This document shows, one piece after another, positions 8,860 through 45,237 of a stretch of DNA of 64,000 nt. The stretch covers positions 85,142,981-85,206,980 of the forward strand of contig NC_068988.1 in NCBI RefSeq assembly GCF_001194135.2. The letters run 5' to 3'. Each line of letters opens with the position of its first letter. The first letter of the stretch is position 1. The notes below the pieces were generated by a model that worked only from the letters and a program-made list of their open reading frames with translations, searched no databases and was not told where the DNA came from. Made by a program: the position numbers and the translations under genes. The DNA is from Octopus bimaculoides (lineage: Eukaryota).

Positions 8860-9956
8860 NNNNNNNNNNNNNNNNNNNNNNNNNNNNNNNNNNNNNNNNN
8901 NNNNNNNNNNNNNNNNNNNNNNNNNNNNNNNNNNNNNNNNNNNNNNNNNNNNNNNNNNNNNNNNNNNNNNNNNNNNNNNNNNNNNNNNNNNNNNNNNNNN
9001 NNNNNNNNNNNNNNNNNNNNNNNNNNNNNNNNNNNNNNNNNNNNNNNNNNNNNNNNNNNNNNNNNNNNNNNNNNNNNNNNNNNNNNNNNNNNNNNNNNNN
9101 NNNNNNNNNNNNNNNNNNNNNNNNNNNNNNNNNNNNNNNNNNNNNNNNNNNNNNNNNNNNNNNNNNNNNNNNNNNNNNNNNNNNNNNNNNNNNNNNNNNN
9201 NNNNNNNNNNNNNNNNNNNNNNNNNNNNNNNNNNNNNNNNNNNNNNNNNNNNNNNNNNNNNNNNNNNNNNNNNNNNNNNNNNNNNNNNNNNNNNNNNNNN
9301 NNNNNNNNNNNNNNNNNNNNNNNNNNNNNNNNNNNNNNNNNNNNNNNNNNNNNNNNNNNNNNNNNNNNNNNNNNNNNNNNNNNNNNNNNNNNNNNNNNNN
9401 NNNNNNNNNNNNNNNNNNNNNNTTACCTTGAGAGGACCTCCAATATGGACTTGTGGTGTATGAGTGTACATTTAATTATATTGTTGACAGACATAAATGC
9501 ACTCTTTCTTATATTGTTGCTGAAACTGCCAGATCATGTGACTTTTCCTCTGTTTTGAGCTCATCAGTGACAGATATCCAGTTGCATCATAACAGATGAA
9601 TCTCCAATCAACAATATATAGAATATCAATGTCTATTCAGGCACTGATGTCACAACAGTCAGTGGGCTTATTAAAAAATATTTAATAGTGATAGAAGCAG
9701 TGTGAATACCAGAAGATAATCTTTATCTTCGAGTTAAAGATATATAGAATATCAGTGTTTAACACAGCATCATGTTAAGTAGGAGGTAAAGATATCTGCC
9801 TGCCTACATACATACATACATATATATATCATTATTATGTTTTAGTTTGTTAACACAGCTAGTCCTTGTTAGTGTCTAAAATACATCACTGTACCACATG
9901 TCACTTCTCCCAGCCCAGTATTTAAGATAAAGGGTCCAGAATCAATGATAATAAAT

Positions 9957-9962
9957 TTTATT
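9957..9962 (-). promoter_or_regulatory. Candidate polyadenylation signal AATAAA directly after the IFT74 stop codon
   Basis: Minus strand reads ATG TGA AATAAA ATTTAT. Use not demonstrable from sequence; the hexamer is common in AT-rich DNA. Confidence 0.35.
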
Positions 9963-10078
9963 TCACATGCCAGTGTTTGACAGCAACTGTTGTAGTTGAC
10001 TGTTGTATTTATCCACAAGGAAGAACACCTGCGTCTTGATGGGTTCATAGTCACACTCTGCTGTCTTGCTGCCAATAT
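9963..10078 (-). CDS. IFT74: IFT74 terminal coding exon (116 nt to stop): YIGSKTAECDYEPIKTQVFFLVDKYNSQLQQLLSNTGM*
   Basis: Acceptor ttctcccag|AT, TGA at 9965-9963. Matches human [26 protein letters not shown]... Confidence 0.95.
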
Positions 10079-11647
10079 CTGGGAGAATTTTTAAGGAAAT
10101 ATGAGGATAGAGGTATTAGTGGTGGTACTGATGGTAGTGGTAATGATAATAGTGGTAATGGTAGTTGTAGCAGTGATGGCAGTGATGGTGATTATGGTAA
10201 TGGTGATGATGGTGGTGGTGGTGGGAAAAGATGATATTGAGACAGAAGGGCGGACATCAAAAGGAATTCCACCGGCAAACTTTGGTCAAACTGACACTAC
10301 AATAGAAGGTACTTACCTGAGGTATCATTCAGTGGAAATGAACTAATACCTACACTGATCTAGCAGCTAAGCACTGATTTGACCAATGGTCTTGAATCAG
10401 ACCAATATTGAACTATGTTGGATAATTGAGCTGTTAGAGAGTTAAATTTTCACAGCTAGACACACTTCCCACATCCTGTTGTTAACCCATCAAGTGCAAA
10501 TTAGGAAGCTCAAGGGCATAACACAATGGTTACAACTAAGTTTGATCTAATAACCATCTGATCAGTAACACAGCTTTCAGAAACCATGTTTCATATAACA
10601 ATTTTGTGCAGACATGAGTTGCTTTCTTCATAATATATAATACATGCTTCTCTCTCTCATCCTGGCTTCCCTTAGCCCAAACACATAAGCAACCAATTTT
10701 ATAAACAGATTTAAACTTTAAAATCAATACAGCCAGTTCAGGCAACAATAATAATCAATAATATTGAGTAATAGTATAAATAGATGTATTTAAATTGATT
10801 TTTTTATTAACAGATCAACTGACTTGATAGATAAGGTATTGAATTTTTTTTAAGAAAATGATTTGTGTACAGGACCCTTTTTCAGAGCCTTTTTCACATA
10901 TCAGTGGGAGAAAGGGAGGAAGTTGCACTTAGACTGGAAACTTAGCCTTAGTGCATGCAACAAAGTGCCATCCACTACAGGTACACAAGGGCCAGATGGT
11001 GGAGGTAAATGGAGATGAATTAAGCCTACCACCTAAGTTCAAAGATTTGTGAGGAGTTCAAACATGGGAATCCCAAACACCCTTCATCTATTAAACAAAG
11101 GGTCCTGCATTTCTTTCTGGCAAAATAATTTGTTTCCACTTTTATAAACTTAATCTGACTGTAGTTAGAAGACCTGTAAGATAATTATCATTATCAACAC
11201 CTATCATATTTGAATTTACATGTATTGTATTCCTGGGAAGAGTATGTGACCCACTGATCTTCAAATAACTACAATCAAACACTGCAGGTTAAACATTTCA
11301 TGTAAGGATAGGGAGAATATATTGACACACACACCCATAATGATCCCTAGTTTGTTCAGTGAACAACCAACCAGGATTCACCAGTGATCCCAACTTTATT
11401 CAATGAGTAGTTAGATCCCATCAGTAATCTCTATTTTCTTCAGTGAACAATCAGTAATCACCAGTGATCCCTACACTGTTTAATGAGCAACAAATGACGC
11501 CTACTTGTTTTTTTTTACAGTGAACTGCAGTGACCTCTGTTTTCAATAACTCAGCTGTTCCATAATTTTACATGAACTAAGTCTCTGAACAAATATGTTA
11601 TTGTTGTAGTTAAAATATGTTGTTTACTGTGTTGTCATAAAGGATAC
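10079..11647 (-). other. IFT74: U12-type (minor spliceosome) GT-AG intron, 1569 nt, last intron of IFT74
   Basis: 5' splice site GTATCCTTT (plus-strand aaaggatac 11639-11647) equals the U12 consensus RTATCCTTT. Branch site TTTCCTTAA (plus 10091-10099) lies about 12 nt from the 3' AG. The other 11 donors in the window are U2-type. Confidence 0.9.
11336..11560. repeat. Degenerate minisatellite, about 40-bp unit, inside the U12 intron
   Basis: Recurring cagtgatccc...ttcagtgaacaa / ttcaatgag units. Confidence 0.6.
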
Positions 11648-11708
11648 ATTCTTTCAAGGTGTGGTTGTTCTGTTCAAGCTGTTGCCATTTCTTTTCAAGA
11701 TTTCCAAG
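11648..11708 (-). CDS. IFT74: IFT74 penultimate exon (61 nt): LGNLEKKWQQLEQNNHTLKE
   Basis: Acceptor tttctttcag|CTT, donor AAT|GTATCCTTT. Matches human [20 protein letters not shown]. Confidence 0.96.
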
Positions 11709-31019: not shown

Positions 31020-31749
31020 NNNNNNNNNNNNNNNNNNNNNNNNNNNNNNNNNNNNNNNNNNNNNNNNNNNNNNNNNNNNNNNNNNNNNNNNNNNNNNNNN
31101 NNNNNNNNNNNNNNNNNNNNNNNNNNNNNNNNNNNNNNNNNNNNNNNNNNNNNNNNNNNNNNNNNNNNNNNNNNNNNNNNNNNNNNNNNNNNNNNNNNNN
31201 NNNNNNNNNNNNNNNNNNNNNNNNNNNNNNNNNNNNNNNNNNNNNNNNNNNNNNNNNNNNNNNNNNNNNNNNNNNNNNNNNNNNNNNNNNNNNNNNNNNN
31301 NNNNNNNNNNNNNNNNNNNNNNNNNNNNNNNNNNNNNNNNNNNNNNNNNNNNNNNNNNNNNNNNNNNNNNNNNNNNNNNNNNNNNNNNNNNNNNNNNNNN
31401 NNNNNNNNNNNNNNNNNNNNNNNNNNNNNNNNNNNNNNNNNNNNNNNNNNNNNNNNNNNNNNNNNNNNNNNNNNNNNNNNNNNNNNNNNNNNNNNNNNNN
31501 NNNNNNNNNNNNNNNNNNNNNNNNNNNNNNNNNNNNNNNNNNNNNNNNNNNNNNNNNNNNNNNNNNNNNNNNNNNNNNNNNNNNNNNNNNNNNNNNNNNN
31601 NNNNNNNNNNNNNNNNNNNNNNNNNNNNNNNNNNNNNNNNNNNNNNNNNNNNNNNNNNNNNNNNNNNNNNNNNNNNNNNNNNNNNNNNNNNNNNNNNNNN
31701 NNNNNNNNNNNNNNNNNNNNNNNNNNNNNNNNNNNNNNNNNNNNNNNNN

Positions 31750-31781
<32 letters not shown>

Positions 31782-32807
31782 TACAAATCAACTGAGTGAT
31801 CTTAATTTAGTGGGCTCGTGGGGTGCCAGCACCATGTAGTAGTGCTGTGTAAAAGTGCCTAGTACACTCTGTAAAGTGGTTGGTATTAGGAAGGGCATCC
31901 ACCAATAGAAAACATGCCAAAACAGACACGGAGTCAGGGCAGCTCTCCAGTTGGCTAGCTCCTGTCAAACCATCCAACCGATGTTAGCATGGAAAGCAGA
32001 AGTTAAATGATGATGATATATAATATATATAAACACACACATATATATATATATATGTTTGTATACATGTGTGTTTGTGTCTCCTTGTCTTGGCATTACA
32101 GGATAGTTATGAATGAATGCTACTACCATTCAGAGATCCTCATTTCTCGTCTTTTGTGAAAGCATGTTCACTTATGGGGAAATATTACTTGCTTGGAAAT
32201 AGGTGAAAGTTGGCAACAGGAAGGGCATCTGGCCATAGGAAATTTACTTCTATGAATTTCTTCTGACCCATGCAAGCATGGAAAAGTGGATGTCAAAACG
32301 ATGACAACGATGATGATGATGAGGTTATCTTGATTAGGTTGACTCTGGTATTGATCAATATGGTGTTTAATAAAATAAATACCAGCCATATACTGAGGTC
32401 GATACCACTGATTGTATTTTCCTCTCCATTTGATCCCAGCTGCCAAAATTGGGAATCAACATTATCACTTAAGATATATTCTGCCATGGTCAAATCTGCA
32501 TCATTACTCTCAGTAAAAACAAAATCATGTACTGGGGTCAATCAACTCTCAACCAATAATTATATGTTGGGCTAAAGTTATAAATTAATTAGAAATTAAT
32601 TTTATCCATCAATCTAAATCCTGCTGGAATTGATTTCACCCAACGTCCTTTCAAGTTCATGAAATACATCCCAATCATATACTAGAGTAGATTCTATCTT
32701 CATCTGTCAAAATCACCACTTTGTGCAAAAGTTACAAACCAATATGGCCTTCCTAAAGGTAAATCAGAACCTAACCTATAAGCTGAGTGTGTAAAGACAT
32801 TCATTAC

Positions 32808-42042: not shown

Positions 42043-43610
42043 NNNNNNNNNNNNNNNNNNNNNNNNNNNNNNNNNNNNNNNNNNNNNNNNNNNNNNNNNN
42101 NNNNNNNNNNNNNNNNNNNNNNNNNNNNNNNNNNNNNNNNNNNNNNNNNNNNNNNNNNNNNNNNNNNNNNNNNNNNNNNNNNNNNNNNNNNNNNNNNNNN
42201 NNNNNNNNNNNNNNNNNNNNNNNNNNNNNNNNNNNNNNNNNNNNNNNNNNNNNNNNNNNNNNNNNNNNNNNNNNNNNNNNNNNNNNNNNNNNNNNNNNNN
42301 NNNNNNNNNNNNNNNNNNNNNNNNNNNNNNNNNNNNNNNNNNNNNNNNNNNNNNNNNNNNNNNNNNNNNNNNNNNNNNNNNNNNNNNNNNNNNNNNNNNN
42401 NNNNNNNNNNNNNNNNNNNNNNNNNNNNNNNNNNNNNNNNNNNNNNNNNNNNNNNNNNNNNNNNNNNNNNNNNNNNNNNNNNNNNNNNNNNNNNNNNNNN
42501 NNNNNNNNNNNNNNNNNNNNNNNNNNNNNNNNNNNNNNNNNNNNNNNNNNNNNNNNNNNNNNNNNNNNNNNNNNNNNNNNNNNNNNNNNNNNNNNNNNNN
42601 NNNNNNNNNNNNNNNNNNNNNNNNNNNNNNNNNNNNNNNNNNNNNNNNNNNNNNNNNNNNNNNNNNNNNNNNNNNNNNNCCCTTTGTCGCCAGCAGGGGT
42701 AAGAGCTCTCTAAACTTTGCCCAGGCTATTCTTATTCTAGCAGCTACACTTTCAGCGCACCCACCCCCACTACTAACTTGGTCGCCCAGATAGCGGAAGC
42801 TATCGACTACCTCTAGTTTTTCACCCTGGAATGAGATAGAAGTTGTTTCCTGTTTGTTTGCAGTCTTTATTGCACCTGAACATCTGCCACAAACAAAAAC
42901 TAACTTGCTAGTTAACCTGCCTTTGATGTTGCTGCACCTCTTATGTGTCCATAGCTTGCACCGGGTACATCTTATAGAGTTACTACCTACTCCTTTTCTA
43001 CATACTGAGCAGGGCCATCTGTTAAATAAATATCCATATATGTACGTGAAAACTACAAATAATATGTTTTCACATACATATGTAGATATTTATGCATCAA
43101 CATCATCGTTTAACATTCGTTTTCCATGCTGGCATGAGTTGGATGGTTTGACAGCAACTAGCAAGCTGCAGGTCTGCTTTGAGCTCTAATGTCATCTTTG
43201 GCATGATTTCTACAATTTGATGCTCTTTCTAATGCCAACCACTTTACAGAGTCTACTGGGTGCTTTTTTTTTAGGTAAAGCAACCAGTACTAATGTGATT
43301 GCCATGTAACCGGGAAGGAAATGGAAAAGCTCCCACCTAAGAAGTATTTGAGAGATGAAGGTGAAAGTGGGAGGCTGTATTCCAGGTATTGAAAGTCTAA
43401 AGTATGATAGAGGGACAAGCACAAGTCTCTTGCTATAGAGGAGATACATGGCTGATGGAGATAAGAGGAAAGTAGCAAAGGGGCTAAAACAAACTTTCAA
43501 GGAATAAGTATAAGGTGAATATAAGAGAGAACATGGACAGTGGGTGTTGCCATCCGGTTTCACCAGTCCTCAGTCAAATCGTCCAACCCATGCTAGCATG
43601 NNNNNNNNNN

Positions 43611-45237
43611 AAATAACGGTCATGGATGCTCAATGAACAAAACAAATGAATTTAATATAGATTCATCCTATTTTAAAAGTAACGAAGAAAACCTTAAATA
43701 GAAAAATGGGCTCAAAATACATATTGTAAATAATTAATTATATTCGAATTAACACATTAAAATCAAATCAAATAAAATAAAATATATGCTGCATTCAAAA
43801 TAAAATAAAATTACAATAGTATATACGCATACTATAATGTATTCACCCTTGTTGTTTACAACTTCTTCCCAATGTTCAACAAGATTTTCAATACCTCGTT
43901 GGTAGAAATCACCCGATTTTGACTTGAAAAATTGATCAAACCAAGCTCTCAATTCTGCATTAGTATTGAACGAAACTCCACACATAGCATTTTAAAGAGA
44001 TTGAAAAAGGTGGAAATCTGATGGTGCCAAATCAGGAGAGTACGGTGGGTGTGGCAGCACTCCCCAGCCATGCGTTTGAATGGCTTCCATGGTCATATTG
44101 GTGATATGAGGGCGGGCGTTGTGCAGCAGAAGAACTCCATGCTGACGATTAGGCCTTTTCTCTTGAATAGCTGTGTTGAGTTGTTCCATCTGTTGAACAT
44201 AGAGTTCCGTGTTGACCGTTTGGTTCCGTTCAAGCAATTCGTAATGGATAATCCCTTCTCAGTCCCACCATATGCACAACATCGTTTTACGCAGATGATC
44301 TTGTTTCATGTACAGTATCGCTTGTTTACCGGGGCTAAACCATTCCTTACGCTGCTTCATATTGATATACAGGCACCGTTTTTCATTGCCAGTAACGATT
44401 CGGTAAAAAAATTGTTGCTTGTGTCCATGAGTTGAGCGGTGACGAGCAAGCAAACCAGTGGAGATGTGGCTCGGTGATTTTTGTTGGTGTCACTTAAAGC
44501 ATGCAGAACCCATGCTCCATACTTCTGAACCTTTCCCAACGAGTAAAGATGCTTCTCTGTAGCAGTGTGGGAGCATTCCATTTTCTCTGCCAGTTCCCTT
44601 GTCGTATGACGAGAATTTTTGTGCAAAAGTTGGTTTAATCGCTCTTCATTGAACTCAACTGGACAGCCAGAATGAGGTGCGTCTTTAAGGTCAAAATTTC
44701 CATTTTTGAACTTGGCATACCAATCACGAGCGGTTCTTCCAGCTATGGCACCCTCTCCATACACAGCACAAATGTCACGAGCAGCTTTTGNNNNNNNNNN
44801 NNNNNNNNNNNNNNNNNNNNNNNNNNNNNNNNNNNNNNNNNNNNNNNNNNNNNNNNNNNNNNNNNNNNNNNNNNNNNNNNNNNNNNNNNNNNNNNNNNNN
44901 NNNNNNNNNNNNNNNNNNNNNNNNNNNNNNNNNNNNNNNNNNNNNNNNNNNNNNNNNNNNNNNNNNNNNNNNNNNNNNNNNNNNNNNNNNNNNNNNNNNN
45001 NNNNNNNNNNNNNNNNNNNAAAAAGAAGGTGTCGAAAATGCTAATTTTTCTTAACTTGACATTGCATTTTAATGATCTGAAAATAAACAAAAATTAACTA
45101 AAATTAACTAGAAAAAAATAAAATAGATTCCAAAATGATTCAAAAATAGAATTCTCGACAAAAATAAAATTCCAAAATTTAAAAACGCAATAAATTCCAA
45201 AATTTAATAAAACGGCGGGAACTTAGTTGCCAACCCA

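What the first reader, a model, noticed from the sequence alone, without database searches (positions are those of the whole stretch)
10079..11647. Terminal intron of IFT74 is a U12-type minor-spliceosome intron
Seen in sequence: the donor is GTATCCTTT and a TTTCCTTAA branch site sits about 12 nt upstream of the AG with almost no polypyrimidine tract, while the other 11 donors are ordinary U2 sites. Established: RTATCCTTT plus a 3'-proximal TCCTTAAC-like branch point define U12 introns, which are rare and can be rate-limiting. Inference: expression of this ciliary IFT-B subunit in a probable cephalopod depends on the minor spliceosome. I recall vertebrate IFT74 being listed among minor-intron genes at possibly the same position, which would make this an ancient bilaterian intron; that recollection is unverified.
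Basis: partly seen in the sequence, partly recalled or inferred. Interest (0 to 1): 0.7.

Follow-up and report, generated by a model that had tools for sequence, protein, structure and literature searches.

The report
Ancient U12 minor intron in IFT74
The last intron of the octopus cilia gene IFT74 is a genuine minor-spliceosome (U12-type) intron, found at the same codon in all 12 animals examined from sponge to panda; this is correct but expected, since human IFT74 is already listed as a minor-intron gene.

Summary
Confirmed. The window holds exons for residues 193-594 of Octopus bimaculoides IFT74 on the minus strand: 13 exons and 12 introns. The last intron (11647..10079, 1569 nt, phase 1, splitting ...NNHTLKE|YIGSK...) starts with GTATCCTTT. 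It has TTTCCTTAA with the branch A 12 nt from the 3' splice site. It lacks both G-1 and G+5, which U2 donors rely on. It is the only in-frame canonical join, and the only RTATCCTT in 64 kb on either strand.

I mapped 216 IFT74 introns in 11 genes. All ten perfect RTATCCTT donors fall at this one homologous site (Fisher p = 2e-16). The sponge has 7/8 there, and the giant panda has the same intron. A log-odds score trained only on non-octopod orthologues gives +16.2 bits, against -10 to -23 bits for the other 11 window introns.

Human IFT74 is a published minor-intron gene, and Octopus sinensis has been used as a minor-intron species. So this is an orthologous copy of a known intron. Two caveats: the "almost no polypyrimidine tract" remark does not hold, and the branch site alone is weakly discriminating. 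There is no RNA evidence from this species. Dependence of expression on the minor spliceosome is inferred.

The parts
11648..11708 (-). Penultimate coding exon of IFT74 (61 nt; LGNLEKKWQQLEQNNHTLKE plus the first base of the Tyr codon)
   Evidence: tblastn against O. sinensis IFT74. Boundaries fixed by exact in-frame joining.
11639..11647 (-). U12-type 5' splice site GTATCCTTT (exon context aagaat|)
   Evidence: Read directly. Only RTATCCTT in the window on either strand. 8/8 to RTATCCTT but 5/9 to the U2 donor consensus, with T at -1 and C at +5. Donor log-odds +16.2 bits.
10079..11647 (-). Terminal coding intron of IFT74: 1569 nt, phase 1, GT-AG U12-type
   Evidence: Unique in-frame join. 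Homologous intron of the same type in 12/12 animals. No assembly gap inside it.
10090..10098 (-). Branch-point sequence TTTCCTTAA (TCCTTAA = 10097-10091; candidate branch adenosines 10092/10091)
   Evidence: 7/8 to TCCTTRAY with the branch A 12 nt from the 3' splice site. BPS log-odds 5.8 bits, the best in the window but only marginally.
10079..10080 (-). 3' splice site AG
9963..10078 (-). Coding part of the terminal exon (last 38 residues plus TGA stop at 9965-9963); AATAAA follows at 9962-9957
   Evidence: Translation, tblastn, sequence context. Use of the AATAAA is not tested.
10120..10260 (-). CAY-rich (ACC/ATC/ACT) microsatellite-like tract inside the intron just upstream of the branch site; also present in O. 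sinensis and Argonauta. Role unknown.
   Evidence: Sequence and three-octopod alignment.

Best explanation
This is the orthologous octopus copy of the ancient U12-type (minor-spliceosome) intron that interrupts the last coiled-coil segment of IFT74 in animals.

Mechanism (from established knowledge of U12 splicing, inferred here):
- The U11/U12 di-snRNP recognises the rigid 5' splice site GTATCCTTT (via U11) and the branch site TCCTTAA 12 nt from the AG (via U12) together.
- U4atac/U6atac.U5 then joins, and U6atac replaces U11 on the ATCCTT.
- The branch adenosine attacks the donor, and the 61-nt penultimate exon is ligated to the terminal exon. This creates the Tyr codon T|AT.

The donor lacks G-1 and G+5 and cannot pair well with U1, so the major spliceosome is not expected to remove this intron efficiently. 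Production of full-length IFT74 mRNA in octopus therefore requires the minor spliceosome.

If the intron is retained, the frame reads ...KECILYDNTVNNIF* and the conserved last 38 residues are lost.

Shown: the sequence signals, the unique frame-preserving junction, and conservation of position, phase and type in 12 animals. Inferred: the actual use of U11/U12/U6atac, and any rate-limiting or regulatory effect.
For: - Junction: it is the only in-frame canonical join, and it gives NNHTLKEYIGSKTAE, identical to O. sinensis and Argonauta proteins and colinear with all other animals.
- Donor: 8/8 to RTATCCTT plus T at +9. T at -1 and C at +5, whereas only 4 of 205 background introns lack both G-1 and G+5.
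- Branch site: TCCTTAA with the branch A 12 nt from the 3' splice site.
- Ortholog-trained score: a model built without any octopod sequence gives +16.2 bits for this donor, against -10.2 to -23.4 bits for the other 11 window introns.
- Conservation: the same site, phase 1, carries GTATCCTT and a TCCTTAAC-like motif 10-18 nt from the AG in O. sinensis, Argonauta, Mya, Lingula, Branchiostoma, Asterias, Porites, Larimichthys, Calypte, Amphimedon (GTATCCAT) and giant panda. 10 of 11 perfect donors lie at this site against 0 of 205 elsewhere, p = 2e-16.
- Selection on the signal: in Argonauta, similarity to Octopus holds through GTATCCTTTA and then collapses.
- Literature: human IFT74 is a listed minor-intron gene, and its expression falls in ZCRB1-deficient cells (PMC7507305; PMC13216214). 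Octopus sinensis is a reference species in a pan-eukaryotic minor-intron survey, which notes that molluscs are relatively rich in minor introns (PMC10639083).
Against: - There is no transcript evidence from O. bimaculoides. The junction rests on protein homology and on gene models from other species.
- The branch-site score alone is not distinctive: 5.8 bits, against 5.6 and 5.1 bits for two U2 introns of the same gene.
- In O. sinensis the branch site has drifted to TCCTTTAAA (0.7 bits).
- The 3' end is as pyrimidine-rich as ordinary introns, so a U2-type 3' end is not excluded by sequence.
- No minor snRNA gene lies in the window, and the rest of the genome could not be searched.
- I did not see the coordinates of the human minor intron directly. 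The mammalian position comes from the panda.
Confidence: 0.95

Rival explanations
1. It is an ordinary U2-type intron whose ends resemble U12 signals by chance.
For: The 3' end has normal pyrimidine content (0.70). The branch-site score is barely above that of two U2 introns. One RTATCCTT in 128 kb of sequence is not improbable in itself.
Against: The donor has neither G-1 nor G+5 and matches only 5/9 of the U2 consensus. The non-coding bases +3 to +8 are identical in 11 of 12 animals spanning Metazoa, and no other of the 205 introns has them. The joint chance probability is about 4e-6.
Confidence: 0.02
2. The real O. bimaculoides transcript does not use this junction. For example, it could end earlier, as in the deposited fragment model P0004, which reads through the donor at 32807. 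Or it could use another terminal exon.
For: P0004 ends with a read-through peptide (…ADNETYTQVMNVFTHS…) and lacks the last two exons. No RNA data were available.
Against: The last two exons are intact and in frame, 89-100% identical to O. sinensis, and conserved in every animal examined. P0004 also contains other non-homologous insertions, and the locus has 12 assembly gaps, so it looks like an annotation artefact.
Confidence: 0.02
3. The sequence is a relic. Octopods have lost or reduced minor splicing, and the intron is now removed by the major spliceosome or is constitutively retained.
For: Branch-site drift in O. sinensis (TCCTTTAAA). No snRNA in the window, although a single 64-kb window says little.
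Against: The perfect donor is kept in three octopods, including the divergent Argonauta, while the flanking intron sequence has diverged. A published survey treats O. sinensis as a minor-intron species and molluscs as relatively enriched (PMC10639083).
Confidence: 0.01

Closest known systems
Human IFT74 minor (U12-type) intron, as listed in MIDB-based minor-intron-gene sets (PMC7507305; PMC13216214)
   Same: Same gene. In the mammal (panda), bird and fish I examined, the U12-type intron is the last coding intron. It splits ...MKE|F/YI... in phase 1, with GTATCCTT and a (T/C)CCTTAAC-like branch site 12-13 nt from the AG.
   Different: The octopus branch site is TCCTTAAA, not TCCTTAAC. The intron length differs (1569 nt, against 144-1732 nt in vertebrates). 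I did not read the human intron's coordinates directly.
GT-AG subclass of U12-type introns in general (consensus /RTATCCTT ... TCCTTAAC, 10-15 nt from the 3' splice site)
   Same: Perfect 5' splice site, near-perfect branch site, 12-nt spacing, GT-AG termini.
   Different: No depletion of pyrimidines at the 3' end. Position +8 of the branch motif is A.
Minor introns of other IFT-B genes (IFT80, IFT88), named with IFT74 as minor-intron ciliary genes
   Same: Same complex and the same class of intron in human, per PMC7507305 and PMC13216214.
   Different: They are different genes and positions, and were not examined in octopus here.

Membership tests
U12-type (minor-spliceosome) intron, GT-AG subclass | 5' splice site /RTATCCTT at the first intron base | tested here: met
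   GTATCCTTT at 11647-11639, 8/8. Log-odds +16.2 bits, against -10 bits or lower for the other window introns.
U12-type (minor-spliceosome) intron, GT-AG subclass | Branch-point sequence resembling TCCTTAAC (TCCTTRAY) | tested here: met
   TTTCCTTAAA, 7/8. Weak discriminator on its own.
U12-type (minor-spliceosome) intron, GT-AG subclass | Short, constrained distance from branch A to 3' splice site (about 10-15 nt) | tested here: met
   12 nt. Orthologues range from 10 to 18 nt.
U12-type (minor-spliceosome) intron, GT-AG subclass | Terminal dinucleotides GT-AG or AT-AC | tested here: met
   GT...AG.
U12-type (minor-spliceosome) intron, GT-AG subclass | No distinct polypyrimidine tract (typical, not strictly defining) | tested here: not met
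   70% pyrimidine in the last 20 nt, against 0.69 for the background. TTCTCCC lies between the branch site and the AG. The orthologous U12 introns also average 0.69, so this feature does not discriminate in this gene.
U12-type (minor-spliceosome) intron, GT-AG subclass | Poor fit to the U1/U2-type donor (supporting feature) | tested here: met
   5/9 to MAG|GTRAGT, with T at -1 and C at +5. Only 4 of 205 background introns lack both G's.
U12-type (minor-spliceosome) intron, GT-AG subclass | Removal requires U11, U12, U4atac and U6atac snRNPs | not testable with these tools
   Needs a splicing assay or knock-down.
U12-type (minor-spliceosome) intron, GT-AG subclass | The host genome encodes the minor spliceosome | not tested
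   No snRNA in this 64-kb window, and the rest of the genome is not available here. The literature treats O. sinensis as a minor-intron species (PMC10639083).
Orthologue of the animal IFT74 terminal minor intron | Same alignment column and phase as the U12-type intron of other animals' IFT74 | tested here: met
   Alignment column 587, phase 1, in 11 of 11 mapped genes. The panda has the same peptide context and phase.
Orthologue of the animal IFT74 terminal minor intron | The junction is used in mRNA of this species | not testable with these tools
   No O. bimaculoides transcript data. Support comes only from colinearity with orthologous proteins.

The most novel reading that the evidence does not exclude
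The IFT74 terminal intron has stayed U12-type, without loss or conversion to U2-type, in all 12 animals sampled from sponge to mammal. This could reflect selection on intron type itself: an ancient regulatory coupling in which minor-spliceosome activity gates production of full-length IFT74, and with IFT80 and IFT88 gates IFT-B assembly and ciliogenesis. The alternative is neutral persistence. Against the stronger reading: several U2 intron positions in the same gene are retained just as widely (9-11 of 11 genes), and the largest survey argues that neutral processes explain much of minor-intron evolution (PMC10639083).
Probability: 0.15. Interest if true: 0.55.

Novelty: new member of a known kind. 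Interest (0 to 1): 0.25.

Why it matters
It settles the annotation of the 3' end of O. bimaculoides IFT74. The deposited protein fragments lack the last two exons, and with them the minor intron.

That gives a clean, deeply conserved test case for asking whether ciliary IFT-B expression is coupled to minor-spliceosome activity outside vertebrates.

It does not reveal a new kind of element. Conserved minor introns in intron-rich, slowly evolving genomes such as molluscs are expected.

Tried and rejected
- A protein search with only the 58-residue C-terminal peptide found nothing. A concatenation of the exon peptides was needed.
- An Rfam scan of the window for minor snRNAs, or any other RNA family, found nothing. 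This is uninformative for a 64-kb window.
- I looked for the human intron's coordinates in supplements. None are held for PMC7507305, and IFT74 does not appear in the held supplements of PMC13216214. I used a panda locus for the mammalian position.
- The camel isoform look-up was not on record.
- Branch site alone as a classifier: rejected. Two U2 introns in the window score almost as high.
- "No polypyrimidine tract" as supporting evidence: rejected.
- Octopus-to-Octopus intron alignment as evidence of constraint: rejected. The two species are about 95% identical throughout, so only the Argonauta comparison is informative.
- intronIC itself could not be run. I substituted consensus-match counts and an ortholog-trained log-odds score.

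Full report
**What is at the coordinates.** On the minus strand, an open exon reads ...LGNLEKKWQQLEQNNHTLKE and is followed at 11647 by GTATCCTTTATGAC. At the other end...CTCATATTTCCTTAAAAATTCTCCCAG ends at 10079, and the reading frame resumes at 10078. Joining 11648 to 10078 creates a Tyr codon (T|AT). It gives ...NNHTLKEYIGSKTAECDYEPIKTQVFFLVDKYNSQLQQLLSNTGM*.

**The gene.**
- A search with concatenated exon peptides hit intraflagellar transport protein 74 of Octopus sinensis (E = 8e-173), Argonauta hians and many other animals.
- tblastn of the O. sinensis protein places residues 193-594 on 13 exons between 61787 and 9966.
- The window's spliced protein is 100% identical to the O. bimaculoides RefSeq fragment XP_014785324.1 over the 129 shared residues. 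It is 95.8% identical to O. sinensis. The window is therefore O. bimaculoides IFT74.
- The two deposited O. bimaculoides fragments (P0007, P0004) do not contain the last two exons. P0004 reads through the donor at 32807 into the 21-kb intron.

**Junctions.** For each of the 12 introns I enumerated GT-AG, GC-AG and AT-AC joins and kept the in-frame join that best matches the orthologue. An exact protein-to-DNA mapper confirmed all 12 without ambiguity. For the last intron there is a single in-frame solution: 11647..10079, 1569 nt, phase 1. No assembly gap lies inside it.

**Is it U12-type?**
- Donor: it matches RTATCCTT 8/8, with T at +9. It matches the U2 consensus MAG|GTRAGT only 5/9, with T at -1 and C at +5.
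- Branch site: TCCTTAAA matches TCCTTRAY 7/8, with the branch adenosine 12 nt from the 3' splice site.
- Other introns: the remaining 11 donors in the window are GTAAGT-like, with 6-9/9 to the U2 consensus and 2-5/8 to the U12 consensus.
- Occurrence: RTATCCTT occurs only once in the window on both strands, where shuffles expect about 5.
- Chance: by base composition, the probability that a required donor carries ATCCTT and that TCCTTAA sits at U12 spacing is about 3e-7 per intron.

**Comparative test.** I fetched IFT74 genes of O. sinensis, Argonauta, the clam Mya, the brachiopod Lingula, amphioxus, the starfish Asterias, the coral Porites, the fish Larimichthys, the hummingbird Calypte and the sponge Amphimedon. 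I mapped all 216 introns, counting the window's.
- All ten introns with a perfect RTATCCTT donor lie at one alignment column (residue 557 of O. sinensis, phase 1), one per gene. The sponge has GTATCCAT there.
- All eleven also have a TCCTTAAC-like motif 10-18 nt from the AG.
- The contrast is 10/11 at this site against 0/205 elsewhere, Fisher p = 2e-16.
- None of the 11 has G-1 or G+5, whereas only 4 of the 205 other introns lack both.
- The giant panda gene has the same intron: NFVMKE/FIATKS, phase 1, aat|GTATCCTTTA...CCCTTAACTCATTTAATTAG.
- In every gene it is the last coding intron, 35-40 residues before the stop.

**Score independent of the window.** I trained a "minor" donor model on the 9 non-octopod orthologous introns and a "major" model on their 154 other introns.
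- The window's last intron scores +16.2 bits. The other eleven score -10.2 to -23.4 bits.
- The branch-site model gives 5.8 bits at 12 nt. That is the highest in the window, but two U2 introns reach 5.6 and 5.1 bits, so the donor carries the classification.

**Constraint.** The two Octopus species are too similar to be informative. Argonauta keeps GTATCCTTTA exactly and diverges immediately afterwards. It also has TTTTCCTTAT 13 nt from its AG. O. sinensis has an A-to-T change in the branch site (TCCTTTAAA), which lowers its score to 0.7 bits.

**Literature.**
- Human IFT74 is listed with IFT80 and IFT88 among minor-intron-containing genes linked to Jeune syndrome (PMC7507305).
- It is named as a minor-intron IFT-B gene that is down-regulated in ZCRB1-heterozygous cells (PMC13216214).
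- A survey of more than 3000 genomes uses Octopus sinensis in its pairwise minor-intron conservation matrix. It notes relative enrichment of minor introns in molluscs (PMC10639083).
- I did not find the human intron's coordinates in held supplements. The mammalian position therefore rests on the panda.

**Mechanism.** From established knowledge of U12 splicing, and inferred here: the U11/U12 di-snRNP binds the donor and branch site cooperatively, and U6atac then replaces U11 at the donor. Because the donor pairs poorly with U1, full-length IFT74 mRNA should require the minor spliceosome. Retention would read ...KECILYDNTVNNIF* and remove the conserved last 38 residues. Any rate-limiting or regulatory role in octopus is inference.

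- The 3' end is not pyrimidine-poor: 0.70, against a background of 0.69.
- The intron is older than bilaterian, since it is shared with a coral and a sponge.

**Verdict.** The observation and the interpretation are correct. This is an orthologous instance of a known, deeply conserved minor intron. It is useful for annotation and as a comparative test case, but it is not surprising.

Noticed in passing
window 9963-61787 (-); proteins P0004, P0007: The deposited O. bimaculoides IFT74 models are two fragments. P0007 (XP_014785324.1) stops at residue 288. P0004 contains a non-homologous insertion, reads through the donor at 32807 (…ADNETYTQVMNVFTHS…) and lacks the last two exons. So the U12 intron is missing from those models.
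   Followed up: partly
L008 (Porites lutea), intron at residue ~21 of the alignment, phase 1: This is a second U12-like intron: gtt|GTATCCTCG (7/8; only 3/9 to the U2 donor) with TTTACTTGAC 21 nt from the AG. It is the only non-target intron passing the joint U12 criterion. The same position holds ordinary U2-type introns in Octopus, Argonauta, Mya, amphioxus and the sponge, so it may be a case of intron type conversion.
   Followed up: partly
L001:95490-95528 (O. sinensis) vs window 10079-10100: Branch-site drift within Octopus: TCCTTAAAAA in O. bimaculoides, TCCTTTAAAA in O. sinensis. The ortholog-trained branch-site score drops from 5.8 to 0.7 bits.
   Followed up: partly
window 10120-10260 (-): A CAY-rich (ACC/ATC/ACT) microsatellite-like tract lies just upstream of the branch site. 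It is also present at the corresponding place in O. sinensis and Argonauta. It could be a plain microsatellite or a splicing-related element.
   Followed up: no
window 45040-43995 (-), 20770-20069 (-), 61543-61394 (-): There are decayed transposable-element ORFs. A Mos1/mariner-like transposase (HTH_48 E = 2e-10; Transposase_1 E = 6e-11) lies in the 7.3-kb intron. A weaker HTH_32-like, mariner-like remnant lies in the 21-kb intron. A weak reverse-transcriptase fragment (RVT_1 E = 8e-4) lies in the intron between the first two IFT74 exons in the window (61709-60270).
   Followed up: partly
window 8860-9422, 31020-31749, 42043-42679, 44791-45019 and eight shorter runs: The window has twelve runs of N (10-730 nt), so it is a draft scaffold. 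None falls in an IFT74 exon or in the candidate intron.
   Followed up: yes
L009:3428-4990, L010:8612-15118, L011:22225-26137 (all minus strand): In fish, hummingbird and panda, an LRR-containing gene with the LRR19-TM domain (PF15176) is nested antisense inside an IFT74 intron. I did not look for a counterpart in the octopus window.
   Followed up: no
window, both strands: RTATCCTT is under-represented: 1 observed against 5.3 expected from dinucleotide-preserving shuffles. This may be chance, or avoidance of cryptic minor-type donors.
   Followed up: no
window 9957-9962 (-): An AATAAA hexamer begins one base after the TGA stop codon. If it is used, the 3' UTR would be very short.
   Followed up: no
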